The position numbers and the translations under genes are program-made. The notes beneath the pieces are model-generated. The model did not search any database. It was given only the letters and a program-made list of their open reading frames with translations, and was not told where the DNA came from. Positions 27,913 to 61,553 of a stretch of DNA of 64,000 nt are shown here, piece by piece. Within the stretch, counting starts at the first letter, position 1, and every line of letters starts with the position of its first letter. The DNA is from Macrostomum lignano (taxonomy: Eukaryota), in NCBI GenBank assembly GCA_002269645.1, contig NIVC01000337.1, positions 62,001-126,000 of the forward strand, in the 5' to 3' direction.

Positions 27913-29295
27913 TCAGTCAGATTTTCGAACGAACTCGCCAGAAAAGGTGCCGCTAAAAGCCGCCGCTGCTGCTGCCGCTGATCGGTGTGACTGTGGGAAA
28001 AATTTATTGTATGCACCTTTATTTGTCGTTCATCTCACTGTTTTTAGGTCTTTCTGTAGAGCAGGCGGCCTCTCATTGAAGGACCGTTTGGGTCAGTGGC
28101 GGCTTCTCACTGAAGGGCCGTTTGGGACAGTGGCGGCCTCTCACTGAAGGACTGTTTGGGACAGTGGCAGCCTCTCACTGAAGGACCGTTTGGGACAGTG
28201 GCGGCCTCTCACTGAAGGACTGTTTGGGACAGTGGCAGCCTCTCACTGAAGGACTGTTTGGGTCAGTGGCAGCCTCTCACTGAAGGACCGTTTGGGACAG
28301 TGGCAGCCTCTCACTGAAGGACTGTTTGGGACAGTGGCAGCCTCTCACTGAAGGACTGTTTGGGACAGTGGCAGCCTCTCACTGAAGGACTGTTTGGGAC
28401 AGTGGCGGCTTCTCACTGAAGGACTGTTTGGGACAGTGGCAGCCTCTCACTGAAGGACCGTTTGGGACAGTGGCAGCCTCTCACTGAAGGACTGTTTGGG
28501 TCAGTGGCGGCTTCTCACTGAAGGACTGTTTGGGACAGTGGCAGCCTCTCACTGAAGGACTGTTTGGGACAGTGGCGGCTTCTCACTGAAGGACTGTTTG
28601 GGACAGTGGCAGCCTCTCACTGAAGGACCGTTTGGGACAGTGGCAGCCTCTCACTGAAGGACCGTTTGGGACAGTGGCAGCCTCTCACTGAAGGACCGTT
28701 TGGGACAGTGGCGGCCTCTCACTGAAGGACTGTTTGGGACAGTGGCGGCCTCTCACTGAAGGACTGTTTGGGTCAGTGGCGGCTTCTCACTACAGCACAT
28801 TTGTTTTAGTGACCCAGGGAGATTTCTCCCAACACCCTAACTGCCCAGCAGTGGCTCCAGTGGTGCACTCACATTCAACAGGATCATCTGTTGCTGGGCT
28901 GGCGTCTCCGCATTTGTCGCCGAGTTGACATCGGCAAACGGCCGTCTGACAGAGGCAGCGGCAGCCGCGGCGGCGAAGGACTGCTGCAGGGCGGCGCGGT
29001 AGAAGTCCCCGGTCAGCTGGTCGGTGAGCTGCTCCTCCAAGTCGATGATGTAATCGATGGCGGCCTGAAGGATCTGCAGCTGGCCGCGGTGGCACTCGGA
29101 ACTGACGCCAGCCTTGGACAGCCACGGGATGGACTGGTGCAGCTGCTCAAAGCTCGCCACAACGTCGAACATCTGCTCGCTGGCAAAATCGGCTCCGTTG
29201 AAGTTCTCGGACTGGCAGCAGTTTGGCGCAGTGCCGGGTTTCACAGTCAGTGATGCAGATCCGGAGGCTGGAAGATCGGTGTACTCGGCGTCCAT
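27913..29295 (-). CDS. emc: Id/extramacrochaetae-like HLH inhibitor (exons 29295-28873 and 27990-27913; 166 aa)
   Basis: HLH without basic region (FEQLHQSIP...QLQILQAAIDYIIDLEEQL); RRPFADVN resembles the Id RTPLTTLN motif; donor AAT|GTGAGT and acceptor cccacag|TCA are both phase 0. Confidence 0.8.
28065..28790. repeat. 34-bp intronic minisatellite (CCTCTCACTGAAGGACTGTTTGGGACAGTGGCAG)n
   Basis: About 21 units filling the emc-like intron. Confidence 0.95.
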
Positions 29296-40622: not shown

Positions 40623-42347
40623 ATGAGCAACAGCCCGGCCAGTACAGAACTGACAGCTCGAACGCCGGACTCACCCGCATCGATCTTGCGGACTCCCGGC
40701 TCCAGCAGCCGCGCCAGCTGGTTCGTCGCCACGCCGACTCGGGTCACCCTGCCCGGTGGCGCCATCGACGTGCACGACGTGCTCATCCTGACTCACTTTG
40801 CCAAGCAGCCGCTGGTTGACTTCGGCCGGGTGCCGGTCGGCCGCCTGGCCACCCAGCGGCTGCTGATCCAGAATCCGCACAGCTACGATCAGGAGGTGCG
40901 CATCAGCCGCCTGCCCGGCGAGAAGCTCGGCATCGCCTGCGTCGAACAGGAATTCGTTGTCAACGCCGAGGGCGAGTACATGCTCAGCTTGACTTGGACA
41001 CCGCGTCGGCCCGGCGGCATGCGCGAACTGGTCGCCTTCCGGGTTGGCGATGTGTACAACCTGCAGGCGGTGCTGCTGGGCTCAGCGGTCCCTGCGGCAG
41101 CCACAGCGGCCGGCCGGAAGCGGAAAACCTGGGCGGAGCAGCGGCTGGTTGCCGGGCAGGGCGAATCGGCCAATTCGGCCAGCCAAGCAGCAGAGAAGGA
41201 GAACCTGGCCGCTGCTGCCGTTCAGTCTGCCGACACCGTCCAGTCGCCCGTGTTCAACGTTGCCAAGGCTCGCCTGGCCGCTACAGTGTCCGGAGCGGTG
41301 AAGTGCAGCCGAAGGACACCGGCGCTCCCGGCCCAGCCGGAGGAGTCGTCAGAGTCGGCGGTGGCGGCGGCGGCGGACCAGTCGGCGGTCAGCAAGAAGC
41401 CGCGCCTGGCCGACATCAGCAGCAGCGCCAGCATCGTCAGCGGCAGCAGCCATGCGGGCTCGTCACTGCTGTCGCAGCTGCTGCACTCAAAACTGGCGGC
41501 CAAGCTTCGCCCCCGGTTTCACCACCAGCAGCACCCGAGCCCTGTGGAGCGGTTCCGCAGGCGGCACAGTCTGCGCCGGACTCTCACCGGCCGTTTCGCG
41601 ACCGCCGCCACTGCTGCTGCTGCTTTGACGGCCGCGTCAACGTCCGCGTCGGAGGTGGCGATCAGCAGCCCACTGAGCGGTCGGGTTGTCAAGCGTCGCT
41701 CGACCGGCCGCGCTGTTCGCCGAGCCCCGAGGCCTATGGTCGCCGCCGCAGTGGCCGAGTCGCCGTCATCAGCCGTTTCGGACGCGTCTGACCTCAGCAA
41801 CCTGTCGATGCTGGCGCCGACCACGCCGCGATCGACCGCGGCCTTGGCTTCGGCGTCGATGGCGGATCAGCGGAGCTGCAGCGTCTTCTACGACGAGCGC
41901 TGGCGTGAGAAGCAGGTGAGGAACAGCCAGGGGGTTCGAGTCGATGCAGACAATGGAAGATGTCGGAGCCTGTGTATTCCTTAAATCCAAACCTTTTGAA
42001 AGATCTCAAGGACTGCACTTTTTTTAACTCCGCAGGAATTCGGTCTTCAGCAGTGGCTGAACTACCTGCTCACGCCCGGCCTTGCCCTGCGCTGCTGCCA
42101 AGGCGAGGAGCAGTCCGCTAGTGCCACCGCTGCTGCTGCTGCCGCCGCCGCCGCCGCAGACACGACCGGCCCCGCGCCCACCAAAGAGGCCGTCTCGCTG
42201 CGCGCCTACGCCGATTTTCGCACACTTGCCGCGCTCAGAAGCCGCGGGCGCCGGCTGATGACCAGCGACAGCTTTGTGTCCGTGATCTGCCGGGTGGAGC
42301 GAGAGGTATGCACTGAGCTTTGCTGGCTTCTGATGGGTTGGTGCAGT

Positions 42348-42387
<40 letters not shown>

Positions 42388-45300
42388 AGTCTGTCTGTCT
42401 GTGTCTGTATCTCTGACACGACCTGCTCGCCACGAACCCTGTGCAGGTGAGCGAAGGCCGACTTCGCGTCCGTCAAGACGTTTGCTTTCGTGCCGACCGC
42501 GGACTCCGGGCCCGCCTAGTAGACTTTTACTTGGCCTTCCATCCGCTGTGGCTTCGCCTAGCGCTCGAGTCGCTGTTTGACCAGCCGATCCTGACCTCTG
42601 CCGCGGCGACGCCCTCGGACGGCAGCGACGCCGGTGGCGCAGCGGCACGACGAACTCCGCTGCGGGCCTTCATTCTTAACCGGGTGCTGTGGAGTCCCGG
42701 CCTGGCTGACAGGTTCGCCATGCCTGGAGTCTGCAATCTGTACAGAAAGGGCTTCGATGCCGAGCTGTCCAAGTGAGTCTGCTAGTTGCTGACCGCTAGC
42801 TAATTAGGATAATGCGATTTGAATATTATAATATTGCAAAGTGAGATCAGATTAAGACAGTCGAAGTTGTTTGCCATATTTAGGGTGAGATAAGAGGAGA
42901 TTGGGACGGTGAGCAATGAAGTAATAATTTTAGCAGGGTGATAATAGATATATTTAAAAATGTGATAATCGATTAGATCTAGAAGGAAAGAATTGATTAT
43001 CTCCAAGGTGAGAATAGATTATCTATAAAGTAAGAATAGATAATCTAAAATGTGAGAATAGATTATTTGAAATGTGAGAATAGATGAGTTTAGGATGCTT
43101 AGAATACGAAATACTATTAAGGTGGAAATATATTAGTTAAGGCAGGTGACATTAGATAAGATTACAAATGGGATAAGATATTGAAGATGAGATTAGATGA
43201 GTTAAGAAAGGAGAGGAAAGGAGTGCCGGCTTAATGCCGACTTCCCACTCCGTCAGGTACGTGCTGAACAAATTCCTGGCCATCGTGTACTTCCTGGACC
43301 GGGCCAAAACTGACCGCCTCATCGACTTCGATCCCTGCCTGTTTACTAAGCGATCGCAGCACAAATCCACCAAAGAGGTGGTGACCGCCTTCACCAGGGA
43401 CTACCTGTCCGGCGAGGGTGACGTCATCAAACACCTGGGCTACATGGGCTACCGGTTGAGCCATGCGCAGAAGCCTCTTGACGAATATCAGTTCGGCGTC
43501 ACCAACTTGGCCGTGGATTTGCGCGACGGAATTCGACTGTGCCGGACGCTGGATATTCTGACCGGCGGCCGGACAGCCCTGTCCGGACAGGTCCGCTGCC
43601 CGGCCATAAGCCGGCTGCAGAAGATTCGCAACTGCCAGGCCGCGTTCGAGGCGCTAAAAGGCCTTGGCGTGTCGCTGGATTGGACACCAGGTGAGATATT
43701 TATTTGGGGCAGGTGAGATTAGATCAGATATCAAGCGGTGAGGTTAGATAAGATATCAAACAGTGAGATTAGATGAGATATCAAGCGATGAGATTAGATG
43801 TGATATCAAGCAATAAGATTAAATGTGATATCAAGTGGTGAGATTAGATCAGCTATCAGACGGTGAGATTATATAAGATATCAAACAGTGAGATAAGATC
43901 AAATATCAAACAGTGCGATTAGATGGGATATCAAGCGGTGAGATTAGAGGAGATATCAAGCGGTGAGATTAGAGGAGATATCAAGCGGTGAGATTAGATA
44001 AGATATCAAACAGTGAGATTAGATCAAATATCAAACAGTGAGATTAGAGCAGATATCAAACGGTAAGACTAGATTTGAAAATAAAGATAAGATTAGATAA
44101 TTGGAAATTTTAGATCAGAGTATGCCATAAAATATTCAAGTGACAAAAACATTAAAAATTTTTGCTGAGAAATGGAACAGTGAGGGCATTGGAATGTAGT
44201 TGGCAAATTCCCTCTATATCGCCGGAACTTCCCCGTGCTCCCGTTGTCAAGGCAACCCGATCGATCCGCGCGACATTGTCGACGGTCACCGGGAGAAGAC
44301 GCTCAGCCTGCTGTGGCGCTGTCTGGCCCGTTTCTCCCTGGCCGAGGACCCGGGCCTCGTTGGCCGGCTTCTCTGCGAGATCCGCGCTCTTCGCCGCGCA
44401 CTCCGCACCCGGGGCGCCGCCTGCCCGCCGGCGCCGGCCGACCCGAGCCCGGCCAGCCTCCTGCCCTGCTGGGCCGCCTGCGTGGCCGCCTTCGACTGGC
44501 CGGCGGGCCGGCCGCCTCCGGCCGAGGACGACAGTCGCGTTGTCATGCGGTTGCTAAGGCACTACGGCGCGGCACCGCCAGCTGCTGACGATAACAATGA
44601 CGGCGCCGATAGTTGGCGCGCGGTGGCCGAGCGCCTGGCTGAGCTCGGACAGTGTCCGGCGTTGATCATGCCGAATTCCTCGGACAGGCCGGACCGCTGC
44701 ATGCTGCTCGCCCAGCTGGCCGCCCTGGCCGGCAGCCTGCTCAACCTCAACGCCGAGTCCCGAGCCGCCAGAGTCATCCAAGCGGCCTGGCGCCGACGCT
44801 GCGCCAGCCTGGCGGGCCCGCCAGCCGCCCAGGAGGACCGGGTTGACGCTCTGCCAGCGAAAGTCAGCGCCGAGTCGGCCGTCTTTGAGTTCAACATCGG
44901 CGTGTGGCCGGGCACGCCGGGGCCGGCCAGCAAGCCAGCGGACACGCCCAGCCGCTGCCTGCTGGACGTACAGGCTATTCGGCGCGCCCAGGCTGCCAGC
45001 GCCATCCAGCGCTGGTTTCGGCGCGCGCGCCAGATTCGAATTGGCCGGATTCGGCGCGAGATTGAGCGACGCAGACGGCGACGCGCCATTTTGGTCATCG
45101 TCACCAACTACCAGATTAGCAGGCGCAACCGGTTCTTTGCCCTACTCCAGGATCACGTGACTCGCTGGCTGGCCAACAGGCAGGCGGCCGGCAGACGCAT
45201 CCAGCAGTTCTGGCGCGCATATCGGATCAAACGGATTGAGCTTGAGAGGCTGCGGGCGGAGCGTCTGGAACGGGAAACACTGGCGGCCTGCCAAATACAG

Positions 45301-46976
45301 CGGGTTTGGCGCAATTTCCGGGCGAAGCAATTAGAGCGGCAGCGACTTGAGCAGGAAAGAATCGAGCAGGAACGACTTGAGCAGGAGCGACTTGAGCAGG
45401 AAAGAATCGAGCAGGAACGACTTGAGCAGGAGCGACTTGAGCAGGAAAGAATCGAGCAGGAACGACTTGAGCAGGAGCGACTTGAGCAGGAAAGAATCGA
45501 GCAGGAACGACTTGAGCAGGAGCGACTTGAGCAGGAAAGAATCGAGCAGGAACGACTTGAGCAGGAGCGACTTGAGCAGGAAAGAATCGAGCAGGAACAA
45601 CTTGAGCAGGAGCGACTTGAGCAGGAAAGAATTGTGCAGGAAAGAATTGAGCAGGAAAGAATTGAGCAGGAGCGACTTGAGCAGGAGCGACTTGAGCAGC
45701 AGCGGCTTGAGCAGGAACGGCTTGAGCAGGAGCGACTTGAGCAGGAGCGGCTTGAGCAGGAACGACTTGAGCAGGAGCGACTTGAGCAGCAGCGGCTTGA
45801 GCAGGAACGACTTGAGCAGGAGCGACTTGAGCAGCAGCGGCTTGAGCAGGAACGGCTTGAGCAGGAACGACTTGAGCAGGAACGACTTGAGCAGGAGCGA
45901 CTTGAGCAGCAGCGGCTTGAGCAGGAACGGCTTGAACAGGAACGACTTGAGCAGGAATGGCTTGAGCAGGAGCGACTTGAGCAGGAACGGCTTGAGCAGG
46001 AACGGCTTGAGCAGGAACGGCTTGAGCAGGAACGGCTTGAGCAGGAGCGACTTGAGCAGGAGCGGCTTGAGCAGGAAAGAATTGAGCAGCAGCGGTTTGA
46101 GCAGGAAAGAATTGAGCAGCGGTGGCTTGAGCAGGAAAGAATTGAGCAGCAGCGGTTTGAGCAGGAAAGAATTGAGCAGCGGTGGCTTGAGCAGGAAAGA
46201 ATTGAGCAGCAGCGGTTTGAGCAGGAAAGAATTGAGCAGCGGTGGCTTGAGCAGGAAAGAATTGAGCAGCAGCGGTTTGAGCAGGAAAGAATTGAGCAGC
46301 GGTGGCTTGAGCAGGAACGGCTTGAGCAGGAACGGCTTGAGCAGGAACGGCTTGAGCAGGAACGGCTTGAGCAGGAACGGCTTGAGCAGGAACGGCTTGA
46401 GCAGGAGCGACTTGAGCAGGAGCGGCTTGAGCAGGAAAGAATTGAGCAGCAGCGGTTTGAGCAGGAAAGAATTGAGCAGCGGTGGCTTGAGCAGGAACGG
46501 CTTGAGCAGGAACGGCTTGAGCAGGAACGGCTTGAGCAGGAGCGACTTGAGCAGGAGCGGCTTGAGCAGGAAAGAATTGAGCAGGAGCGGCTGGAACGGC
46601 AGTCACAGGCTGCCAGCCGGATTCAACGGGCTTGGCGCGGCCTCGTTGCCAGGCGGGAGCTGCGGGATCGGCGTACCCGGGCCGCCGTCACTCTGCAGGC
46701 GGCCTTCCGTGGCTGGCGGGTCCGCGCCCGCTGCCAGGTGGCCGCCATGCCACAGCTTCGTCGCCGGATATCCGCCGCCTACGCCGACGCTCGCCGCAAC
46801 CCGGAGCGGCTGCTGCTCGCCCGCGCCCGCTCGGCTCTGCGGTTTGCCCGTCAGCAGCTGCCGGCGCCGGCCGTGGCGCAGCAACTGGCGGACCTGCGGG
46901 CCGGCACCAGCCACTCAGCTAAGCTGTGCGAACTGCTGTGCAGCCAGGTGTGTTCGTTGGTTTCAATGTGTGTGCC

Positions 46977-47029
<53 letters not shown>

Positions 47030-47064
47030 GCCTGTCTGTCTGTCTGTCTGTCTGTCTGCCTGCC

Positions 47065-47105
<41 letters not shown>

Positions 47106-47124
47106 GCCTGTCTGTCTGTCTGCC

Positions 47125-47165
<41 letters not shown>

Positions 47166-47248
47166 GCCTGTCTGTCTGTCTGCCTGTCTGTCTGTCTGCC
47201 TGTCTGTCTGTCTGCCTGTCTGTCTGTCTGCCTGTCTGTCTGTCTGCC

Positions 47249-47289
<41 letters not shown>

Positions 47290-47326
47290 GCCTGTCTGTC
47301 TGTGTGTGCCTGTCTGTCTGTCTGCC

Positions 47327-47367
<41 letters not shown>

Positions 47368-47400
47368 GCCTGTCTGTCTGTCTGTCTGTCTGTGTGTGCC

Positions 47401-47489
<89 letters not shown>

Positions 47490-47492
47490 GCC

Positions 47493-47563
<71 letters not shown>

Positions 47564-48337
47564 GTGTCTGTCTGTGTGTCTGTCTGTCTGTCCGCCTGTC
47601 TCTCTGTCTGTCTCAGTCTATCAATCTACCAAACCCCTCCCGCCATCAACAGTCCGGCGCTGTCGCAGCCCTGTTCTCACTCATGGCAGGCTGCAACCGA
47701 AGTCTACCCCACCAGCACATTGTGCTGCACAGTGTCCAGATCCTGCACAATCTGATCCGGCACTCGGCCACTGCGGCAAGCGTTGCCAGAGAGTGTCCGG
47801 TGAAAGCTGGCGACGTGCTGACCGACGCGCTTGTGTCCGGGGCGGTTGTCCGGCCTTCGCCGCTGCAGCAGGTGAGGCAATATTGGCATCAAGAGCTCAT
47901 GAGCACATTCAAGCGCTACAATTTTTTACACAGGCACGAACTCACACAGGGTGTACAGCAGTCCTGACTGTCTAATCGTCAGGCAGGTGCAATTTCTGTG
48001 CCTTAAGGGTTGGGAAATTCTTGTGAACCCCCGGCCTCCGCTCCCACAGGAACTGGTGAAGGCCAGCGCCTGCCTGCTGGCCTCTCTGGTCTCCAGCGCC
48101 GCAGGCGTCAGCGGCGGATTCGCCCTGTCCCGGCGCGCTGTTGTCCGCCTGCGCGAAACCCGCGACGCGCTGCTGCGCCGGGCGGGCCTGGAGGAGCGGC
48201 GGCTGGTCAGCCAGCTCAAGGCCTCGGGCGCCCTGCTGGTCCGCGTGGAGCCGGACTGGGTGCTGAAGCGGTCAGCCAATCAGCACATGGCCAGCCCCAT
48301 CACTGCGGTCTGCTACCTGTGCGAGCTGTTGCGCTGA
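40623..48337 (+). CDS. ASPM: Abnormal spindle-like microcephaly-associated protein homolog (7 exons: 40623-41915, 42036-42305, 42447-42772, 43257-43690, 44252-46947, 47653-47871, 48050-48337; about 1841 aa)
   Basis: ASH domain ([13 protein letters not shown]); [10 protein letters not shown]|[14 protein letters not shown]; [12 protein letters not shown]; CH domains ([29 protein letters not shown]); IQ motifs; ARM-like C-terminus with EPDW; all GT-AG junctions keep phase. Confidence 0.95.
43713..44060. repeat. 25-bp minisatellite in ASPM intron 4 (GTGAGATTAGATCAGATATCAAGCG)n
   Basis: About 14 diverged units. Confidence 0.88.
45340..46600 (+). repeat. Coding 15-bp repeat encoding ([15 protein letters not shown])n in ASPM exon 5
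   Basis: About 83 units, in frame with IQ motifs on both sides; much of the variation is synonymous. Confidence 0.9.
46976..47615. repeat. (TCTG)n microsatellite in ASPM intron 5
   Basis: Lies between donor 46948 and acceptor 47652; a shorter run is at 42346-42410 in intron 2. Confidence 0.97.
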
Positions 48338-50778: not shown

Positions 50779-51461
50779 GCTGACAACAAGCCGAGGAAAA
50801 CACGGCTCAACAAAGCGGAGAAATCCCTGGAGAGACTCGGGACTGAGTGGCTCCAGCAAATTTTTTTAATTAAAATGAAAACAAGCTCTTGGTTATACAT
50901 GATAAATATTTGTCCTAGCTAGTAGATGCAAATGCATTTTAGCGATAAATCCATCAAAACTACTCACACATTCAATTTTGAAAGTAGCTAAATAAGAAGC
51001 TTTAATTAGCATGGTTTTATGACTGCTTTTGTCAAATTTTCAAGATTTTATGACGATGCAAATCAGGCCAAATCAGCCAATCGCTCCTGGAGAAACCAAT
51101 TTGTATTTGGAGAAATTGGCTATTAAGACAAAAGTTCATTAAAGTGTGGAAAGCGAAAATATTATTCATAAAATCAGTTCATAAAACCTTAAAACTTATT
51201 TTATAAGGCAGAGGGGAGTTTAGACCAAGGGTCAGTTTTGAATAAAATATCACAGCAGCAAATTGAATTTCCGTTCTCTTGTGTTGAGAAAACCTGCATT
51301 TTTACAGAGATACAGCTACTAGCAAAAATAGTTTGACAAGCGCATCGAAGCTACTCACATCAGTAGTATTGACGCGTTTGCGGAACAGCAGTAAAATAGT
51401 TTTATAATTGTCTGATACAAATAATTATGGCAAATAAATTAGACAAAATACGCCAAGCTGC

Positions 51462-54400
51462 TCAGGCGGACAGCAGATCCGGCTTCTTCTCCTCTGGTGG
51501 CGGCGGCGCCCTGGCCTCTTCGAGTTCTTTCTTCAGGGCCTCCAGCTGAAAGTTCGAATAGTTTGTGTGAGTACGGTATGGATGTAGCTGATAAGAGTGG
51601 AGTAGACTCGGTGGAGTAGGCTGGGTGGACTGGAGTAGGCTGGGTGGAGTGAAGTAGGCTGGGGGACTGGAGTAGGCTGGGTGGTGTGGAGTAGGCTGGG
51701 TGGACTGGAGTAAGCTGGGTGGAGTGGAGTAGGCTGGGTGGAGTGGAGTAGGCTGGGTGGACTGGAGTAGGCTGGGTGGACTGGAGTAGGCTGGGTGGAG
51801 TGGAGTAGGTTGGGTGGAGTGGACCAGGCCACATTGCGGTTAAGAAAGCATGCAACTCCCAGACTCCACAGCCGCCCACCTTGGCCTCCAGGATGGCCTC
51901 CCGCTCCTTGGCGGCCTGCAGCTCGAGCTGGACTGTCGCCTGCGACTCCTCGGCCTCCGTAGCCCGCAGCTCCGCGTCCCTGAGCTGCGTCTGCAGCTGC
52001 TGCAGGGCGCCCAGCGCTTCGAAGGCGCGCCCAGCGTCGGGCGTCTGCGCGCGCACGCCCGGCTCCATGGCGACGACGTCCTGCGGCGGCGACTCCGGCG
52101 ACTGCGACAGGCTGCGCGAGTGCACGTTGAGGTCCGGGCCGATGGCTTCTACAGTCTCGTCTAGCGGCTGCTCCTGCGGCTGCTCATCTGGCTGCTGTAC
52201 AGACTCTTCTCTGGGTTCCTCAGTTTCCACGGGATCGGCGAATTCAACTTGCTGCGGCGGCTGCTGCGGCTGCTGCGGCTCCAGGCTGGAAAGCGGAGAG
52301 GTGGGTTTATGGCAGTTCTGTGAGGCGGTTTTGGGTAGATTCCCTGGTAGGTTTATGGCAGTTCTGTGAGGCGGTTTTGGGCAGATTTCCTGGTAGGTTT
52401 ATGGCAGTTCTGTGAGGCGGTTTTGGGCAGATTTCCTGGTAGGTTTATGGCAGTTCTGTGAGCCGGTTTTGGGCAGATTTCCTGGTAGGTTTATGGCAGT
52501 TCTGTGAGGCGGTTTTGGGCAGATTTCCTGGTAGGTTTATGGCAGTTCCGTGAGGCGGTTTTGGGCAGATTTCCTGGTAGGTTTATGGCAGTTCTGTGAG
52601 GCGGTTTCGGGTAGATTCCCTGGTAGGTTTATGGCAGTTCTGTGAGGCGGTTTTGGGTAGATTCCCTGGTAGGTTTATGGCAGTTCTGTGAGCCGGTTTT
52701 GGGCAGATTCCCTGGTAGGTTAATGGCAGTTCTGTGAGCCGGTTTTGGGCAGATTCCCTGGTAAGTTTATGGCAGTTCTGTGAGGCGGTTTTGGGTAGAT
52801 TCCCTGGTAGGTTTATGGCAGTTCCGTGAGGCGGTTTTGGGCAGATTTCCTGGTAGGTTTATGGCAGTTCTGTGAGGCGGTTTCGGGTAGATTCCCTGGT
52901 AGGTTTATGGCAGTTCTGTGAGGCGGTTTTGGGTAGATTCCCTGGTAGGTTTATGGCAGTTCTGTGAGCCGGTTTTGGGTAGATTCCCTGGTAAGTTTAT
53001 GGCAGTTCTGTGAGCCGGTTTTGGGTAGATTCCCTGGTAGGTTTATGGCAGTTCTGTGAGCCGGTTTTGGGTAGATTCCCTGGTAGGTTTATGGCAGTTC
53101 TGTGAGCCGGTTTTGGGTAGATTCCCTGGTAGGTTTATGGCAGTTCTGTAGCCTCTGTATTGCAAGGTTTGTTTGGTTGCGGTAACTCTTCCCAATGAAG
53201 TGTTAAAGTTGCCGTTACTATGACAACAAGAATCGCCTCACCCCTCAGTTGCCGGTTCGCTGATCTGCTGACCGTCTGGCCCGATGTCCGAGGCCTCTGG
53301 CTGGCGGCCCTGCAGCGCCAGCAGCGAGTCTTCAATGGCCATTGTGGGCTGTGTCACCTGGCTGCTCTGGGTCGGCTGGCGTGGGTCCCTGGTCAGGTTC
53401 GCCGCCAGCGTGGGGTCTGGGATCATGTGATAGGGGAAGCCCAGGTCCTCCAGGATGCAGGTTGCCGCGTGGCACCAGTCCCGGGCCTCCGTCTGAAAAC
53501 GGTGGAGTAGAGTGGGTTGGAGCAGAGTGGGTTGGAATAGAGTGGGTTGGAGTAGAGTGGGTTGAAATAGAGTGGGTTGGAGTGGAGTGGGTTGGAGTAG
53601 AGTGGGTTGGAGTAGAGTGGGTTGGAATAGAGTGGGTTGGAGCAGAGTGGGTTGGAATAGAGTGGGTTGGAGTAGAGTGGGTTGGAGTAGAGTGGGTTGG
53701 AATAGAGTGGGTTGGAGTAGAGTGGGTTGGAGTAGTGTGTTGGAATAGAGTGGGTTGGAGTAAAGTGGGTTGGAATAGAGTGGGTTGGAGCAGAGTGGGT
53801 TGGAGTAGAGTGGGTTGGAGTAGAGTGGGTTGGAATAGAGTGGGTTGGAGTGGAGTGGGTTGGAGTAGAGTGGGTTGGAGTAGAGTGGGTTGGAGTAGTG
53901 TGTTGGAGTAGTGTGTTGTAGTAGAGTGGGTTGGAGTAGAGTGTGTTGAAATAGAGTGTGTTGGAGTAGAGTGGGTTGGAGTAGAGTGGGTTGGAGTAGA
54001 GTGTGTTGGAGTAGAGTGGGTTGGAATAGAGTGGGTTGGAGTAGAGTGTGTTGGAGTAGAGTGTGTTGGAGTAGAGTGTGTTGGAGTAGAGTGGGTTGGA
54101 ATAGAGTGGGTTGGAGTAGAGTGGGTTGGAGTAGAGTAGAGTGGGTTGGAATAGAGTGGGTTGGAGTAGAGTGGGTTGGAGTAGAGTGAATTAAAGTGGA
54201 GTATGCTGGAGTAGAGTGGGTTGGAGTAGAGTGGGTTGGAGTAGAGTGAATTAAAGTAGAGTGGGTTGGAGTAGAGTGGGTTGGAGTAGAGTGGGTTGGA
54301 GTAGAGTGGGTTGGAGTAGAGTGGGTTGGAGTAGAGTGGGTTGGAGTAGAGTGGGTTGGAGTAGAGTGGGTTGGAGTAGAGTGGGTTGGAGTAGAGTGGG

Positions 54401-57400
54401 TTGGAGTAGAGTGGGTTGGAGTAGAGTGGGTTGGAGTAGTGTGTTGGAGTAGTGTGTTGGAGTGGAGTGTGTTGAAATAGAGTGTGTTGGAGTAGAGTGG
54501 GTTGGAGTAGAGTGGGTTGGAGTAGAGTTGGTTGGAGTAGAGTGTGTTGGAATAGATTGGGTTGGAGTAGAGTAGATTGGAGTAGAGTGAATTAAAGTGG
54601 AGTATGCTGGAGTAGAGTGGGTTGGAGTAGAGTGGGTTGGAGTAGAGTGGGTTGGAGTAGAGTGGGTTGGAGTAGAGTGAATTAAAGTGGAGTATGCTGG
54701 AGTAGAGTGGGTTGGAGTAGAGTGGGTTGGAGTAGAGTGGGTTGGAGTAGAGTGAATTAAAGTGGAGTATGCTGGAGTAGAGTGGGTTGGAGTAGAGTGG
54801 GTTGGAGTAGAGTGGGTTGGAGTAGAGTGAATTAAAGTAGAGTGGGTTGGAGTAGAGTGGGTTGGAGTAGAGTAGAGTGGGTTGGAATAGAGTGGGTTGG
54901 AGTAGAGTGGGTTGGAGTAGAGTGAATTAAAGTAGAGTGGGTTGGAGTAGAGTGGGTTGGAGTAGAGTGGGTTGGAGTAGAGTGTGTTGGAATAGATTGG
55001 GTTGGAGTAGAGTAGATTGGAGTAGAGTGTGAAAGGCATTTGCAGAGGTATACAGTGCACTATTGAGCAGGGTGTGCCCAAGTGTTTGAGCCAATGCCGA
55101 AGGCTGCTTGCATTTGTTTTGCTCAGCAACAGAAAGCGCCGTTAGCAACGCACCCGCAGGCGCTGACAGAGTGAAAAGATAACATATAATAACCAATAAC
55201 ACATCCTGTTCGGCAATGCTCGAACACTGAGCACCTCGAAATTCTCGTGAACTCAAAATTAATATGCGACTTATCCATAGCCGATAAATGAACAGTGATT
55301 TAAATGGCTTTTTGTGCACTAATGATGAAGTAATTTGGTGACGCAGACATTGTGTTAATACAGTATTGATCAAACCTTCCTTGTGATAAGCTTTGCCGTT
55401 ACAGTTCAGTAGTCTGCAAAGAGAAGGACACAAAAGCATAGAAGCAGGATAGGTGTGCAACACAAGCAGTTCACGGGAGCCTGTCTGAAGCGCCAGAACC
55501 CGGCAGGTGATAAATGCAGTTCTAGGAAAATCGCAAAAATCTCTGACCTTTGCTCCTTTTGGCCGAGAGCTGCTTTAGAAACAGTGAAATCATTTGAAGG
55601 TTTTACCGCAAGAAATGAAAATTTCCATCTTTTATATGCAGCAAAAAACTCGATTTTAAGTCATGGGTCGGCGAACTTTTTAAAACTAAGATATACTCGT
55701 AGAGGGGTCGCCATCATAAACCCGAAAAATCACAACTCCGAAAGCACTTCCCATCATAAACCCGAAATATCACAAACCTGAAATATCATAACTCCGAAAA
55801 ACAAAATAGCAACGCCCATCATAACCCCGAAAAATCATAACTCTGAAATTAATAGCAACGCCCATCATAAACCCGAAATATCACAACTCCGAAAAATCAC
55901 AACTCCGAAAACCAAACTAGTGTTGGACATTGCTAGAAATTTCGGAGTTATGATATTTCGGGTTTATGATGGGCAATGCTATTTTTGTTTTCGGAGATAT
56001 GATATTTCGGGTTTGTGATTTTTCGGGTTTATGATGCCCCCCACCTCGTAGAACATAGCACATGGCTGTGGACCAGAGGAGAAGAGAGGAGCGTTGGGAG
56101 GAGGAGAGAGAGAGGAAAGAGGGAGATGAGAGAGAAGGGAAAGGGAGAGAGGAGAAGGAAAAGGGAGAGAGGAGAGAGAAATATAAAAGGGGAGGGGAGA
56201 GTAAAGAGAGAGGAAGGGAAAGAGAAGAGGGGAGAGGAAAAAGGGGAGAGAGGAGAGGAGAGAGGAGAGGAGAGAGGAGAAGAGAGAGGAGAGAGGAGAG
56301 GAGAGAGGAAGGGAAAGAGGAGAGGGGAGAGAGGAGAGAAGAGAAAAGGGGAGAGAGGAGAGAGGAGGGGAGAGAGGAGAGAGAAGGGAAGAGAGGAGAG
56401 AGGAGAGAGGAGAGGGGAGAGAGGAGAGAAAAGAGAAGGGGAGAGAGGAGAGAAAAGGGGAGAGAGGAGAGAAGAGAGGAGAGAGGAGGGGAGAGAGGAG
56501 AGGATCGAGAGAGCTGAGAAGAGACACAAACCTTGATCGGGCCGGATCGCTATTGTGAAGTTCAAAAGACCCGAGGGCCGGATTGCTATTGTGAAGTTCA
56601 AAAGACCCGAGGGCCGGATCGCTATTGTGAAGTTCAAAAGACCCGAGGGCCGGATTGCTATTGTGAAGTTCAAAAGACCCGAGGGCCGGATCGAGAGGCT
56701 TCGTGGGCCGCGTGTGGCCCGAGTTTGCCGAGCCATGACTTAAGTAATCGCCAGGCACAGAACAGAAATCGAATTTAAGGGGTGCATAAAAACAGTTCAG
56801 GAAAACTGAAACTCAAGGCGAATTGGAGTCTGCTAATTAAAACAAAAGTCTACAAAGTTCACGCAAGATCTATGCTATTGAGAGTAACATCTGAAGTCTT
56901 TCAGGCTGATTAATTTTTACCGGAATTTTGCTGCCCACAGATTGCAGCTTCTTAATCCGTTCCTCATCCTGCTGAGGCTGAGGTTCGTCAAGGGGTTTCG
57001 ATATGTAGTTTGAATGCTTTATGGCCTGGGGCTGGGGCCGTAGCCCAGTGGTCTAGCGCGGCGCTCTCGTGTGCAAATTGGAATCTCGGCTTGGGTCTGC
57101 TAGCGTAATTAACGCCTTTAATGGCCAAACCCCAAAGTACATGCCTAACGATAAATAAAGTTAGGGCCGCTGTACGCTCCTGTATCCGAGCGCTTGTGCG
57201 CCTGCTCAAAGAAGTCGACGGAATGGGAAGTGATGTCTCTCGCCGGTTGCGTGTTGATGTCGATTAAAGTGCACCAGGTTGCACATAGCCCCCCCCCCGC
57301 GGCTAATAAAAAAATGGCGCCTCATGCAAAAATCTATTAGGATGGCTCAGTGGAGAATGCATTTAGGGTTAAGCAATAACTGACATGCCTGACGATTAGA

Positions 57401-60400
57401 CAGACAGGGCACCCTGTGTACGTCGTACACCCTGTGTGAGCATGATGAAGTTAGCATGCCTGCTCGCCTCATCGTTTAGTTGCGGCAAGTTTAGTTCCTG
57501 CAAACAAACCACTTTGTGGGTCGAATCCCTCACGCCAAACAGCAAGGGGACTCACCTTGAGCCTGATCAGCTCGGCCTGCTCGTTATCGAAATCCTCGTC
57601 TTTGACGGCCATACGCTGCGCCACGATGCCGCTGACAATCACCGAGCACGAGTCGGCTAAGTACACCGTGAACTTTGTAAGCCATTCGCCGAGCTCTTTG
57701 AACGAGGCCAGAAGCTCCTCAGGAGTGGCGGACGCCATCAGGGCGGCCTGGTGAGCCTCCTGGCTGTTTCCTGGATAGTCCGGGGCCAGGCGCAGCAGGG
57801 ACTGGATCATCCAGCGCAGCATGCCGATGTGCAGCTGCTTGGCCGATTCTGTCATTCGCGTGTCCTCGCTGTCGATGCCGCTGGCCACTTTGTTAGCCCA
57901 CTTGCCCACCTCCGTCACTACCATATTGGGGTCCAGGCTGGGCTCGCGCTGATTGGCTGGCTGGTCCTCCTTGGCTGTGCTGCCAACCTGGAGTTTATAT
58001 AGTAGGGGGAAGCAACCTCACTCCTCGTGACTGATGCTAAAAAAACATGTACATTAATGTACTCTCCGGCAATCATACATGTAAACAGTCCTTATCACAG
58101 CTGATTCTAAAAATAGAAATGCGCCAACGATTTTCCCTAGACCGGAGAAAATAGCATGACGCTATTGGTCGAATAAACCATTGATAAATTGTCACGTGAT
58201 TGGCTTTGTGGGGGTTGCTTCCACTGTGATGCTAAAAATAGATTAGGCACACGCAATTCGAATGACACTATTGGACGAAAGGATTGTCACGTGATTGTCC
58301 TGAGCCAATAGCGACATGCTTCGTGGGGGTTGCTTCCACTGTGATGCTAAAAATAGATCTATAGATCCAACTAACCGCGGCGATCGTCTCGTCTATAAGG
58401 CTAAGCCAATCCTCGATGAGAGCGTAGAACCGAGTCCACTCCTGCTCTGGCAGCAGCTTGCCGGTGTTCAGCACCGACTGCAGCCGGGTAGTCCACGTCT
58501 CCAGAATGTTCTGCAGATTGATGACTCCCCTGGCGACGCCGTTCTCGCCAATTAGTCGAATATTCAGCTGGCGCATCAGCTTCTCAACCAGGGAGGACAC
58601 GGCGCTCATAGTCTTCTTCTCGGGGAATTCTGCGCCGTCCTCGGCCCGATGCCGGGCAAACAGCGTCACGCAGGTGTCATTCCAGGTGAGCATGAGCCGC
58701 CTCATCGAGGCCATGCTCTCCTGAAGATCCAGCATGACGTCGCCGCCGAACGCGTTGGCCTCCTTGTTCAGCAGGGCCTCAAGCTCGCGCAGCTTGCCGA
58801 GAACCTGGGAGGTGTTCTCAACGGTCAGCAGCTGTTTGAGCCGGGCGGGGCCGTCACTGAGGGTGGCGGCGCGGGGCGATCTGTACTGCTTTCGGGTGCA
58901 AACTCCACAACCCGTGCTTATTAGCCAAACAGTGCAAAATTCCTTTATAAAAAGTGCTTTGTGCTTGGATTCAACCATAAAGTGTTCACTTGGTTAAGCG
59001 CACGTGTCCCATATCAAAATTTCTAATTAAAGTGCATGAACTTCAAATTGCTCGTGATTAATTTTTACCTGAGATCGTCAACGCTGCAAATGAGTGAGGT
59101 TGCAATGAATTGGGAGAATTGAGATCACCTTTATTGAGTACAACTATGGATACTTCTCAATTGGGTCATTGTTCATGACCAGTATGACAAATTTTGATTT
59201 ATTCTTGATGAACAACTTTAATGCCTATGATCTGCACTTGCTATGACCATCTAACCGGTCATTAACGATGCCTGCTATGACAATCTAAAGGGTCATTAAC
59301 AATGCCTGCTATGATCATCTAAAGGGTCATTAATAATGCCTGCTATGACCAGCTAAAGGTCATTAACGATGCCTACTATGACCAGCTAAAGGGTCATTAA
59401 CGATGCCTGCTATGACTGAGACAGAAGTCATCATACGAGTATCTGACTACTTATAAGATTAACTAAGAAGTCATAACAGAGAAACCGGGTCAGTGCGGAT
59501 CCCGGAGCCCCGAACTCACAGGAACTGATCCTCGAAGTTCTCCTGCAGCCCCGTGACCAGCTCACGCAGCTTGGTCAGGTTCTTCCTGCTGCTGTCGTCC
59601 CTCACTCGCAGGTGGCCAACAAACACGTCGACTTTCTCGCGCCAGGTGTCCACCAGAGCCTGCACCCTGGCCAGATCTTCGGTGTCGCGTTCGGACAGCA
59701 GGACGGAGAAATGGCCGGCCAGATGCTGCCAGGCTTTTTCGGCCGCGTGCAGCCGTTTGCAGGAGACCAGCTGAGTCTCCTCCATCACCTTCAGGGCCAG
59801 GCAGTAGGCCGTGTGGCTCCACAGCTCTCGCTCCTCAGTCAGCTGGCTCACCTGTATTAAATAGTGCAGATACCGTGTGTTACTAGTCTATGAAATTTCT
59901 AAATTAAATGTAGTTGAGCCCATCTAAAATGTAAAACTTAAATATGCTGAATATTAGGAGCAGGTGCACTTCTTTAATCCATTAGGTTAAAGTACACTTG
60001 GAAACCTAGGTGCACAAGAACCTTTCGCATACTAAAAGTACACGTGCACTTTAGCAGTAAATTACATACGCACTTTAGCAGAAAAGTACACGTGCACTTT
60101 AGCAGTAAATTACATACGCACTTTAGCAGAAAAGTACACACACATTAACAGAAAGGTACATAAGCACTTTAGCAGAAAAGTACATACACACTTTAGCAGA
60201 GTAAAGTACATAAGCACTTTAGCAGAAAAGTACATACTTTAGCAGCAAAGTGCATACACACCTTAGCAGAAAGGTACATACGCAATTTAGCAGAAAAGTA
60301 CTCATTTACTTAAACAGAAAATTTCCAATATACTTGTACTTGAAAAATACAGATGTCCTTTTGTACTAACACGAACTTTTGATAAAAGATACATATGCAC

Positions 60401-61553
60401 TTTTGTTCTATAAAAGTAAACACGCAATTATACAACTGGCTCGCACCTGATCTTCCAGTCTCGCCCGCTGCAGTTCGTACAGACCGTGGTACTCGCCTAG
60501 CAGGTCGGCCGACCGCTTCGCCTCCTCCAGCGCTTTCCGGAGCTCCTCCTGCGTAGCCCGCGCCTCACCGCTGATCTGTCTGTCGTGATCCTTGACGTCG
60601 ACAAGCTCGGCAGTCAGCACCCCGATGGTGGTTTTGAAACGTAGCAGCTCCTCAGTTAGGCGGCGGTCGAGTGCTCGCTGCGCCATCACTTCATCGTGCA
60701 GACTCTTCACCTGGGCGGGCACCTTCGACAGCAACAGGTTGTAGCGGCCGCGCAGGGTCGACAGCAGCTGGCCGCGCTCAACGCACTCGACGGTCACCTG
60801 GCGAATGAGCTCGTGAAACACGACGTTGTACACGTCCTGCTCGCGCTTCACCAGGTCCAGCAGCCGGTGCATCTGGGTCGGGCCCGTCACCTCGAATTCT
60901 TCATCAACTCCGACGCTGGCCAGCATCTGGTCGAAGGTCTTCGACAGCTGCAGCACCTCCCAGCGACTGGTGGGCTTCCTGCCGATGATTCGAGGTCGCA
61001 TAGATTTAGAAAATTAACTACTTACAGTAAATTTTTTAAGCTTATCGAATAACAACTTACAAGGATGGAAACATCACCAGGTGCTTTTCGTGGTCCTCCA
61101 GTTGGGTGGAATGATCGCTGGAAATTTGCATCATCGTTTTCCAGCATTAGTGACAATTGAAAAAAAGGCAGAGAGTAGCTCTTGAATTGCCGCAGTGTCC
61201 ACAGTCTCCCAATTGAACTAACTGGCAAACTAACGGTCAGGGAAAAAGTACATCGACTCACCTGGGATTGTACTCCAGCCCGACCACCGCTTTGTTTTTC
61301 ACCACGTGAAACTCCTCCGGAATGAGAGTGTCGGGCAGGCGGGCCTCCTTGGGCTCGCCGCCTTGCGCCTGCAGCCTCCGACGCTGCTGCTTCTGCTTGC
61401 GCGCCTGCTCCCGGACCAGCGAGGGGTCCTCGGTGGCTGTCGCGGTCGCCTTGGCCTCCAGTGACTTCACCGCGCTCGGCGCGTCGTACAGAAACGAAAT
61501 GTCCCTGCGAATTAGTCAGGATTTCATCAGTGCGTTTATTAGCTAACTAACTG

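What the first reader, a model, noticed from the sequence alone, without database searches (positions are those of the whole stretch)
45340..46600. About 83 in-frame EQERL/I pentapeptides inserted in the ASPM IQ region: a charged helical rod in place of IQ repeats
Seen: 15-bp unit, no frameshift over about 1.25 kb, frequent synonymous variation (CGA/CGG, GAA/GAG, ATC/ATT), sub-blocks such as ([20 protein letters not shown])x4, and no splice signals at the borders; IQ motifs flank it in frame. Inference: about 415 residues of E/R/Q-rich single alpha-helix or coiled coil (about 60 nm if fully helical) act as a calmodulin-independent spacer between the microtubule-binding N-terminus and the ARM C-terminus, a convergent way of lengthening ASPM.
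Basis: partly seen in the sequence, partly recalled or inferred. Interest (0 to 1): 0.74.

Follow-up and report, generated by a model that had tools for sequence, protein, structure and literature searches.

The report
Charged helical repeat inside flatworm ASPM
The spindle-pole gene ASPM of the flatworm Macrostomum lignano carries a fast-changing in-frame tandem repeat of 84 copies of a five-residue unit (EQERL) between two of its calmodulin-binding motifs; it probably adds a long acidic helical stretch, and looks more like a tolerated repeat expansion than a designed replacement for those motifs.

Summary
Window 45334-46593 (+) holds 84 perfectly in-register 15-bp units encoding (EQERL/I)n. 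They lie in exon 5 of an intact 7-exon, 1841-aa ASPM/asp orthologue, with IQ motifs directly on both sides in frame. The organism is Macrostomum lignano.

A second genomic copy (GCA_002269645.1, PAA74894.1) is about 98% identical at synonymous sites. It has the same exon structure but only 51 units, and only the array edges are shared. Outside the array the two copies show pN/pS = 0.09, so the gene is under constraint. Inside the array, evidence for selection is weak (P = 0.056).

No usable splice sites flank the array. The RNA-seq-derived GenBank model keeps 41 units, so the array is most likely translated.

The peptide has no Gly or Pro, carries net charge -69, and AlphaFold2 predicts it as all helix. 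It has no heptad seam, so it is not a coiled coil, and it is not a pentapeptide beta-helix. By charge-network criteria it is only a borderline single alpha-helix.

Best reading: an exonic minisatellite, derived from the inter-IQ linker in a repeat-rich genome, that lengthens the helical neck of ASPM. "Replacement of IQ repeats" and adaptive lengthening are not shown. It is a new variant of a known kind, of moderate interest.

The parts
40623..41915 (+). ASPM exon 1 (start codon provisional); contains the ASH domain
   Evidence: Pfam PF15780 ASH, E=5.9e-21, residues 53-148. GT donor at 41916. 99% identical to L001 8895-10180.
42036..42305 (+). ASPM exon 2
   Evidence: AG/GT borders. The junction matches the independently annotated PAA74894.1. 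Colinear with fish ASPM from residue 565.
42447..42772 (+). ASPM exon 3
   Evidence: AG/GT borders. Colinear with fish ASPM.
43257..43690 (+). ASPM exon 4 (calponin-homology domain)
   Evidence: Pfam CH, 28.3 bits against a cut-off of 26, on the spliced protein. Hits named 'abnormal spindle-like microcephaly-associated protein', E=3e-27.
44252..46947 (+). ASPM exon 5: end of the CH region, IQ-like motifs, the EQERL array, then two more IQ motifs
   Evidence: One open frame. Acceptor AG at 44250-44251. Strongest donor in the region at 46948 (CAG|GTGTGT, score 9.3).
44773..44805 (+). IQ-like motif 1 (VIQAAWRRR)
   Evidence: Aligns to the first IQ of fish ASPM. Coordinates.
45001..45033 (+). IQ-like motif 2 ([11 protein letters not shown])
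   Evidence: Read directly from the sequence; coordinates.
45196..45231 (+). IQ motif ([12 protein letters not shown])
   Evidence: Regex match. Coordinates.
45238..45276 (+). Native E/R/L-rich inter-IQ linker ([13 protein letters not shown]), similar in composition to the repeat unit
   Evidence: Read directly from the sequence. Fish ASPM has 'LERRHRAA' at the equivalent inter-IQ position.
45292..45327 (+). IQ motif immediately before the array ([12 protein letters not shown])
45334..46593 (+). Exonic minisatellite: 84 x 15 bp encoding (EQERL/I)n, 420 residues
   Evidence: TRF shows 0% indels. Unit table. Composition E36 Q22 R20 L14 I5 %, no Gly or Pro, net charge -69. AlphaFold2 predicts all helix.
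45349..45573 (+). Exact higher-order repeat: 45 bp x 5 ([15 protein letters not shown])
   Evidence: This block structure is absent from the second copy, L001.
46069..46308 (+). Exact higher-order repeat: 60 bp x 4 ([20 protein letters not shown]); a fifth copy lies near 46429-46488
   Evidence: The F- and W-containing units are absent from L001.
46618..46653 (+). IQ motif immediately after the array ([12 protein letters not shown])
   Evidence: Pfam PF00612 IQ, E=7.3e-10, for the 118 residues after the array, two matched stretches. Coordinates.
46690..46725 (+). Last IQ motif ([12 protein letters not shown])
   Evidence: Aligns to the last IQ motifs of fish ASPM.
46948..47652 (+). Intron 5, mostly (CTGT)n
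   Evidence: TRF 46976-47613, 158 copies. 705 bp here against 1353 bp in L001.
47653..47871 (+). ASPM exon 6 (C-terminal ARM/HEAT-like region)
   Evidence: AG/GT borders. 100% identical to L001. Colinear with the fish ASPM C-terminus.
48050..48337 (+). ASPM exon 7 with the stop codon
   Evidence: Aligns to the last residues of fish ASPM.

Best explanation
The window comes from the flatworm Macrostomum lignano and carries an intact 7-exon ASPM/asp orthologue of 1841 aa. In exon 5, between the fifth and sixth IQ-like motifs, lies an exonic minisatellite of 84 in-register 15-bp units encoding (E-Q-E-R-L/I)n.

Shown: the array exists, it is in frame with both flanks, it has no usable splice sites, and it is kept in an RNA-seq-derived gene model of a second copy. 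It turns over very fast, with 84 units here against 51 in that copy and only the edges shared. The rest of the gene is under strong purifying selection in both copies.

Inferred: the unit arose by slippage or unequal exchange from the E/R/L/Q-rich linker between IQ motifs (LERQ...), in a genome where tandem repeats are extremely common. It is translated into a strongly acidic alpha-helical segment without Gly or Pro, up to about 63 nm long if fully helical. That segment extends the helical IQ neck separating the N-terminal microtubule-binding ASH/CH part from the C-terminal ARM-like part. It is tolerated because any multiple of 15 bp keeps the frame and the encoded peptide continues a helix. 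Its length does not appear to be tightly constrained.

It is not a canonical coiled coil, and it is only a borderline member of the charged single-alpha-helix class.
For: Array and frame.

Gene identity:
- ASH, E=5.9e-21; CH; IQ.
- Colinear BLASTP to fish ASPM, E=7e-91 for the CH core and E=1e-8 for the C-terminus. The fish IQ array lies exactly between these two anchors.

Gene model: 7 exons, all GT-AG, one stop at the end.

Organism and second copy: PAA74894.1 / NIVC01000916.1.

Constraint: 20 synonymous against 5 nonsynonymous differences, pN/pS=0.09. A model with one neutral lineage predicts at least 27 nonsynonymous differences, P=2e-7.

Array turnover: 84 against 51 units, shared prefix of 1 unit and suffix of 6 units, exact higher-order blocks.

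No splice sites: best internal donor 2.6 against 9.3. The 150-nt gap in the GenBank model has no GT-AG or GC-AG placement.

The annotation is RNA-derived, and the genome is 15% tandem repeats with 180 Mb of duplicated blocks (PMC5730564). In this window, 29 arrays cover 28% of the sequence.

Structure:
- AlphaFold2 predicts all helix, mean pLDDT 78.7.
- No Gly or Pro.
- Like-charge clashes are half of shuffle, and Q-E (i,i+4) pairs are double.
- No heptad periodicity.
Against: - No RNA reads, cDNA or peptides were examined, so translation of this particular copy is inferred.
- The codon-level test inside the array is weak: 9 synonymous of 25 steps against 20.7% expected, P=0.056, and absence of stops P=0.14.
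- AlphaFold2 was run on a single sequence, pTM is 0.26, and it tends to call any E/R/L-rich sequence helical.
- Net charge -69 and a charge-network density equal to shuffle leave room for a partly disordered polyanionic linker rather than a stiff rod.
- Array length in an assembly can be wrong for 1.3 kb of near-identical units.
- No orthologue from another flatworm could be examined.
Confidence: 0.62

Rival explanations
1. Adaptive rod. The array is a selected, calmodulin-independent stiff single alpha-helix that substitutes for IQ-calmodulin units and sets the distance between the microtubule-binding N-terminus and the C-terminal domain. On this view it is a convergent route to a long ASPM neck.
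For: - The array sits exactly where other ASPMs have their IQ array.
- It is predicted helical and has no hydrophobic seam.
- It is kept in frame in two copies that are both under purifying selection.
- Charged single helices following IQ motifs have been gained repeatedly in myosin levers (PMC5378345).
- With about 7 IQ motifs plus 420 residues, the helical neck would be about as long as 24 IQ motifs.
Against: - Length differs by 33 units (about 25 nm) between copies at 1.8% synonymous divergence, and the interiors are unrelated.
- No significant codon-level selection inside the array.
- Salt-bridge density is about 0.34 per residue against 1.4-1.7 for ideal single helices, and networks equal shuffle.
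- Variant units include W, F and V in this copy, and P, A and K in the other copy.
- There is no evidence that IQ motifs were lost.
- No cross-species data.
Confidence: 0.2
2. Disordered acidic linker. The array is translated but behaves as an expanded polyanionic, largely disordered tether rather than a helix.
For: Net charge -69 over 420 residues, an E:R ratio of about 2:1, and a charge-network density no better than shuffle. AlphaFold2 pLDDT falls to 54-59 in two stretches, and pTM is 0.26.
Against: No Gly or Pro in 420 residues, and E, Q, R, L and I all favour helix. The (i,i+3) E-R, (i,i+4) R-E and Q-E pairings are in register, and like-charge clashes are half of shuffle. AlphaFold2 assigns helix to more than 97% of residues.
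Confidence: 0.15
3. Coiled-coil dimerisation or oligomerisation domain that pairs ASPM molecules.
For: About 20% Leu/Ile/Phe/Trp. Coiled-coil predictors often flag sequences of this kind.
Against: Fourier power at periods 3.5-3.75 is about 0. Hydrophobic residues occupy all seven heptad registers evenly, 12-14 each. At most 3 of 8 a/d positions are hydrophobic in any 28-residue window, and there are no (i,i+3,i+7) hydrophobic networks.
Confidence: 0.06
4. Not part of the protein. The array is removed by splicing, is an assembly artefact, or lies in a dead paralogue.
For: Older ML2-assembly predictions (UniRef A0A1I8FCG9, A0A1I8JQJ1) lack the array. The GenBank model skips 10 units. RNA was not inspected directly.
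Against: - No usable donor or acceptor.
- The skipped 150 nt cannot be a GT-AG or GC-AG intron.
- The ML2 predictions are riddled with frameshifts and are not transcript evidence.
- The array is present in two independently assembled copies.
- The RNA-derived model keeps 41 units.
- This copy has an intact 1841-aa ORF, and the one-neutral-lineage model is rejected, P=2e-7.
Confidence: 0.06
5. Pentapeptide-repeat beta-helix, the bacterial A(D/N)LXX fold, suggested by weak PDB sequence hits.
For: phmmer hits to designed or cyanobacterial pentapeptide-repeat proteins, E=1e-4 to 5e-3, driven by Leu at every fifth residue.
Against: No Pfam pentapeptide hit at E<=0.1. The inward-facing i-2 position is Glu rather than a small residue. 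AlphaFold2 predicts all helix with no strand.
Confidence: 0.01

Closest known systems
ASPM / Drosophila Asp / C. elegans ASPM-1 (spindle-pole, microtubule minus-end proteins)
   Same: Same gene family and same domain order: ASH, CH, IQ neck, ARM/HEAT-like C-terminus (review PMC10047693). The size of the central helical neck is the main variable between species: 24, 60 and 81 IQ motifs in fly, mouse and human.
   Different: Here only about 6-7 IQ-like motifs are present, and most of the neck length comes from a non-IQ pentapeptide array. I found no ASPM paper describing such an insert.
Charged single alpha-helix (SAH, ER/K) domains that follow IQ motifs in myosins X, VI, VIIa and others
   Same: A helix-favouring, charge-rich, seam-free segment directly continuing an IQ helix and adding length without light chains. 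It has been gained independently many times (PMC5378345).
   Different: Classical SAHs have roughly equal acid and base content and dense (i,i+4) networks. This array has E:R of about 2:1, 22% Gln, 20% hydrophobic residues, salt-bridge density about one fifth of ideal, and networks equal to shuffle. It is also a near-perfect tandem repeat, unlike most natural SAHs.
INCENP SAH domain (mitotic chromosomal passenger complex)
   Same: A long charged helix in a mitotic microtubule-associated protein, acting as an extensible tether between two functional ends (PMC4571873).
   Different: The INCENP SAH is basic enough to bind microtubules directly. This array is strongly acidic and would be expected to repel the acidic tubulin tails (inference).
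Trichohyalin-type E/R/Q/L-rich tandem repeats (comparison rests on my own knowledge of the protein, not tested here)
   Same: Very similar composition (Glu, Arg, Gln, Leu) in short tandem repeats, long proposed to form an elongated single-stranded helical rod.
   Different: An unrelated protein and tissue, with different unit lengths. Only the sheep 23-residue repeat paper appeared in my search (PMC2116006), and I did not read it.
(EKERL)n / ([10 protein letters not shown])n arrays in unrelated proteins
   Same: Near-identical pentapeptide arrays occur in bacterial histidine-kinase/Hpt proteins, in metagenomic proteins, and in insect, holothurian and chytrid proteins. There are 973 proteins at E<=1e-10, and all of those I inspected are repeat-only matches.
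   Different: There is no shared flanking sequence, so these are convergent low-complexity arrays and not homologues. None has a characterised function that I could find.
Coding minisatellites (exonic VNTRs)
   Same: Unit length a multiple of 3, head-to-tail arrays, higher-order blocks, conserved edges with a variable interior, and a large copy-number difference between close copies.
   Different: None in kind. This is what the array is at the DNA level.

Membership tests
ASPM/asp | N-terminal ASH (ASPM-SPD2-Hydin) domain | tested here: met
   PF15780, E=5.9e-21, 74.9 bits against a cut-off of 27; confirmed on the spliced protein.
ASPM/asp | Calponin-homology domains in the centre, colinear with known ASPM | tested here: met
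   PF00307, 28.3 bits against a cut-off of 26. BLASTP to fish ASPM residues 565-1123, 36% identity, E=7e-91.
ASPM/asp | IQ calmodulin-binding motifs after the CH region | tested here: met
   PF00612, E=7.3e-10, for the 118 residues after the array. Four regex IQ motifs plus 2-3 degenerate ones. Calmodulin binding itself was not tested.
ASPM/asp | Conserved ARM/HEAT-like C-terminal region | tested here: met
   Colinear BLASTP to the last 290 residues of fish ASPM, 24% identity, E=1e-8.
ASPM/asp | Spindle-pole / microtubule minus-end function | not testable with these tools
   Needs localisation and RNAi in the animal.
Charged single alpha-helix (SAH / ER/K) | Dense opposite-charge pairs at (i,i+3) and (i,i+4) | tested here: inconclusive
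   0.343 per residue, which is 2.8 SD above shuffle (0.285) but far below ideal repeats at 1.4-1.7.
Charged single alpha-helix (SAH / ER/K) | Three-residue charge networks (i,i+3/4,i+6/7/8) | tested here: not met
   0.16 per residue, against 0.156 for shuffle and 2.5-2.9 for ideal repeats. Criterion taken from PMC5378345.
Charged single alpha-helix (SAH / ER/K) | No hydrophobic seam; few helix breakers | tested here: met
   Zero (i,i+3,i+7) hydrophobic networks and no Gly or Pro.
Charged single alpha-helix (SAH / ER/K) | Monomeric, stably helical in solution | not testable with these tools
   Needs CD plus SEC-MALS or ultracentrifugation. AlphaFold2's all-helix call is only suggestive.
Canonical coiled coil | Hydrophobic periodicity of 3.5-3.75 residues (a/d core) | tested here: not met
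   Fourier power about 0 at 3.5, 3.6, 3.67 and 3.75. Heptad registers are evenly filled. At most 3 of 8 a/d positions are hydrophobic.
Pentapeptide-repeat beta-helix (PF00805 type) | A(D/N)LXX consensus with a small residue at i-2; profile match | tested here: not met
   No Pfam hit at E<=0.1. The i-2 residue is Glu. Only weak phmmer hits, E>=1e-4. AlphaFold2 gives no strand.
Coding minisatellite (exonic VNTR) | Head-to-tail units of 10-100 bp, in multiples of 3, with copy number varying between close copies | tested here: met
   15-bp units, 84 against 51 copies, exact 45- and 60-bp higher-order blocks, conserved edges.

The most novel reading that the evidence does not exclude
The array is a selected length module. 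In this flatworm lineage ASPM keeps a long neck mainly through a light-chain-free acidic helix instead of IQ-calmodulin units. That would make M. lignano a natural experiment, in a transgenic-tractable animal, for separating 'neck length' from 'calmodulin binding' in ASPM function at spindle poles.
Probability: 0.15. Interest if true: 0.6.

Novelty: new variant of a known kind. Interest (0 to 1): 0.35.

Why it matters
ASPM is the most commonly mutated primary-microcephaly gene, and the number of its IQ repeats is its most conspicuous evolutionary variable. What the long IQ neck contributes is still unclear: length, stiffness, or calmodulin and light-chain binding.

An orthologue with few IQ motifs and a long non-IQ helical insert at the same position offers a comparison case. 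M. lignano has RNAi and transgenesis, and its natural copies differ by 33 units.

If the array proves to be merely tolerated, it is still a clean example of how a repeat-rich genome feeds in-frame minisatellites into helical linkers. It also shows why gene models skip or truncate such arrays, as the GenBank model does here.

Tried and rejected
- Two word-index protein searches, with the exon-5 flank and with the ASH exon, found nothing. The exhaustive HMMER search then found the M. lignano protein.
- I first read P0002 and P0033 as transcript-derived, because they lack introns and the array. The cluster look-up showed they are gene predictions from the older, indel-prone ML2 assembly. They are full of frameshifts and even run into the antisense of the neighbouring gene, so I dropped them as evidence on splicing.
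- The Rfam scan of the window found no families.
- Foldseek of the model against the PDB found no matches, as expected for a featureless helix.
- The PDB sequence search returned only pentapeptide-repeat beta-helices. I treated that fold as a rival and rejected it.
- Fragments at 55-63% identity from the CH-exon search were fetched as L002-L004. They belong to unrelated eukaryotes (GC 39-69%) and stop before the IQ region, so cross-species conservation of the array could not be tested.
- Literature searches for ASPM with single alpha-helix, for Macrostomum with ASPM, and for the gene id returned nothing.
- The minus-strand ORF 45227-46606 and the +2 frame ORF are open only because the unit has no stops. 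Neither continues into the flanks, so both were rejected as genes.
Full report
**Observation**

The sequence at 45334-46593 (+) is a perfect-register tandem array. Tandem Repeats Finder reports it with 0% indels and a score of about 1500. Cut into 15-bp units in the frame of the long ORF 44200-47967, it gives 84 units of 15 distinct DNA types, dominated by EQERL and EQERI.

- The synonymous variants are present (GAA/GAG, CGA/CGG/AGA, ATT/ATC).
- Second codon positions are almost invariant, and third positions 9 and 12 are split about 50/50.
- The block [20 protein letters not shown] occurs as four exact 60-bp copies (46069-46308) plus a fifth further on.
- A 45-bp block occurs as five exact copies (45349-45573).

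All six frames are open over the array because the unit has no stop in any frame. Frame openness is therefore not evidence of coding by itself.

**What gene this is**

The surrounding ORFs give:
- an ASH domain (PF15780, E=5.9e-21);
- a calponin-homology domain;
- IQ motifs directly after the array (PF00612, E=7.3e-10);
- two further IQ motifs directly before the array.

I built a 7-exon model with GT-AG at every intron: 40623-41915, 42036-42305, 42447-42772, 43257-43690, 44252-46947, 47653-47871 and 48050-48337. It translates to 1841 residues with a single terminal stop.

The CH core aligns colinearly with residues 565-1123 of a fish ASPM (36% identity, E=7e-91). The last 286 residues align with the extreme C-terminus, residues 2547-2835 (E=1e-8). 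In the fish protein, about 1,400 residues of IQ repeats lie between those two anchors. In this protein the same interval holds six or seven IQ-like motifs plus the 420-residue array.

**Organism and a second copy**

Two word-index searches failed. An exhaustive HMMER search with the whole exon then found a 96%-identical protein. It is PAA74894.1, BOX15_Mlig031656g2, from Macrostomum lignano assembly GCA_002269645.1.

Its locus (L001) is not the same sequence as the window:
- Exons are 99-100% identical.
- Introns are 94-99% identical, with large length differences in their own minisatellites.
- The same axonemal-dynein-light-chain-domain gene lies downstream on the opposite strand.

The genome paper reports 180 Mb of duplicated blocks at 95% identity or more in this line, and 15% tandem repeats (PMC5730564). 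A diverged duplicate or homeologue is therefore expected.

**Is the gene, and the array, functional sequence?**

Outside the array the two copies differ at 20 synonymous and 5 nonsynonymous sites (pS=0.0176, pN/pS=0.09). If either lineage had been neutral since the split, at least 27 nonsynonymous differences would be expected (P=2e-7). The 'dead paralogue' reading is therefore unlikely.

Inside the array the picture is different. The second copy has 51 units, not 84. The two arrays share only the first unit and the last six. The F- and W-containing units and the exact higher-order blocks are specific to the window copy, while K-, P- and A-containing variants are specific to the other copy. 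This is fast minisatellite turnover at 1.8% synonymous divergence.

A minimum-spanning network over the 23 unit types gives 9 synonymous and 16 nonsynonymous steps, against 20.7% synonymous expected (P=0.056), and no stop (P=0.14). The other two frames score worse, but the test is weak.

**Is it in the mRNA?**

With a consensus-derived scoring matrix, the strongest donor near exon 5 is the real exon end at 46948 (score 9.3). The best GT inside or next to the array scores 2.6, and internal acceptors lack pyrimidine tracts.

The GenBank annotation of the second copy derives from RNA-seq assemblies with ORFs called by TransDecoder (PMC5730564). It keeps the array as coding sequence, but with 41 units where the DNA has 51. 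None of the 69 possible placements of that 150-nt gap has GT-AG or GC-AG ends. It is therefore an alignment gap from a shorter transcript contig or another copy, not an intron.

Two older UniProt entries that lack the array are frame-shifted predictions from the earlier assembly and carry no weight. I could not inspect reads, so translation of this copy is inferred, not shown.

**Structure**

The peptide is E 36%, Q 22%, R 20%, L 14%, I 5%. It has no Gly or Pro and carries net charge -69. AlphaFold2 on a single sequence, with the flanking IQ motifs included, gives helix for more than 97% of residues. Mean pLDDT is 78.7, and there are two low-confidence breaks at unremarkable positions. pTM of 0.26 means the packing of the three helices is not to be trusted.

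Hydrophobic residues recur every fifth position:
- Fourier power at 3.5-3.75 residues is about zero.
- All seven heptad registers are equally filled.
- No (i,i+3,i+7) hydrophobic network exists.

A canonical coiled coil is therefore rejected.

Weak PDB hits to pentapeptide-repeat beta-helices reflect only the period-5 leucine. There is no Pfam hit, the i-2 residue is Glu, and the model contains no strand, so that fold is also rejected.

I scored the array against published single-alpha-helix criteria (PMC5378345):

| Measure (per residue) | Array | Shuffle | Ideal repeats |
|---|---|---|---|
| Opposite-charge (i,i+3)/(i,i+4) pairs | 0.34 | 0.285±0.021 | 1.4-1.7 |
| Three-residue charge networks | 0.16 | 0.156 | 2.5-2.9 |
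| Like-charge clashes | 0.171 | 0.336 | not a criterion |
| Q-E (i,i+4) pairs | 0.357 | 0.161 | not a criterion |

The array is helix-compatible and seam-free, but it is a borderline single alpha-helix and is strongly acidic. If fully helical it would be 63 nm long.

**Origin**

Before the last upstream IQ motif, the native linker reads [13 protein letters not shown]. The array starts as [12 protein letters not shown] and ends [16 protein letters not shown]. Fish ASPM has LERRHRAA at the equivalent inter-IQ position.

I infer that the unit is an expanded piece of the inter-IQ linker. This window contains 29 tandem arrays covering 28% of its length, including arrays in three introns of this same gene. 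The mutational supply of such expansions in this genome is very high. A 15-bp unit can never break the frame.

**Best explanation and rivals**

The best reading (confidence about 0.6) is a coding minisatellite in the ASPM neck. It is translated into a long acidic helical spacer, and it is tolerated rather than tuned.

It is attractive because myosins have repeatedly added charged helices after IQ motifs and because INCENP uses one in mitosis. However, the 84-versus-51 difference, the weak selection signal, the poor charge network and the lack of any evidence for IQ loss all argue against claiming it.

A disordered polyanionic tether (about 0.15), a coiled coil (about 0.06), non-translation (about 0.06) and a beta-helix (about 0.01) rank lower.

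**Novelty**

Near-identical EKERL, ERERL and EQERL arrays occur in hundreds of unrelated proteins, from bacteria to insects. There are 973 hits at E<=1e-10, and those inspected are repeat-only matches. The sequence type is therefore recurrent and convergent.

I found no paper describing such an insert in any ASPM, and none on the Macrostomum gene. It is a new variant of a known kind. Interest is moderate, mainly because M. lignano is experimentally tractable and its natural copies already differ by 33 units.

**What I could not do**

I could not examine RNA reads, other Macrostomum species or other flatworm ASPMs. The fragments I could fetch came from unrelated eukaryotes and ended before the IQ region. 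I also could not test helicity or oligomeric state.

Noticed in passing
L001 about 9990 (equivalent to window 41725); also window 41357-41362: The second M. lignano copy has a 1-nt deletion in a C run (CCCC to CCC) in exon 1, plus an in-frame 6-nt deletion. The frameshift explains why GenBank PAA74894.1 starts at an internal Met and lacks the ASH domain. It may be a homopolymer assembly error or a real N-terminal truncation of that copy.
   Followed up: partly
L001 14287-14504: The GenBank protein PAA74894.1 has 41 repeat units where its own genomic DNA has 51. The missing 150 nt cannot be placed as a GT-AG or GC-AG intron, so the deposited model under-reports the array.
   Followed up: yes
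window 1-64000: 29 separate tandem arrays (periods 4-61 bp, up to 250 copies) cover about 28% of the window. This is well above the 15% reported genome-wide for this species.
   Followed up: partly
window 4664-6808 and 18095-19107: The same 21-bp satellite (GTGCCTGCGGCTACAAAATGA) lies on both sides of a block with two long retroelement ORFs: 10188-14888 (+), a 1566-aa pol-like ORF, and 15418-17724 (-), a gag/protease-like ORF. It looks as if mobile elements inserted into one satellite array.
   Followed up: no
window 42306-42446, 43691-44251, 46948-47652 vs L001: The ASPM introns differ between the two copies mainly through the length of their own micro- and minisatellites: intron 2 is 141 against 444 bp, and intron 5 is 705 against 1353 bp of (CTGT)n. 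Their unique parts are 94-100% identical.
   Followed up: partly
window about 51400-61500 (-): A convergent neighbouring gene with an axonemal dynein light chain domain (AXDND1-like). Its exons include 57469-57924, 58268-58978, 59516-59851 and 60408-61001. The same neighbour, in the same orientation, is annotated next to the second ASPM copy (PF10211).
   Followed up: partly
window 28837-29295 (-): An ORF whose C-terminal half resembles an Id/Emc-type helix-loop-helix protein (…LQILQAAIDYIIDLEEQL…). It was not tested against any library.
   Followed up: no
P0002, P0033 (UniRef A0A1I8FCG9, A0A1I8JQJ1): These older M. lignano predictions are named 'Lipoyl-binding domain-containing' and 'PDZ domain-containing'. 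They are frame-shifted chimeras of the ASPM 3' half with antisense translation of the neighbouring gene, so the names look wrong.
   Followed up: partly
P0003, P0005, P0007/P0161: Bacterial and metagenomic proteins, including a histidine kinase and Hpt-domain proteins, carry 50-70 tandem EKERL, ERERL or EQERL units as linkers between folded domains. This is a recurrent, uncharacterised pentapeptide linker type.
   Followed up: partly
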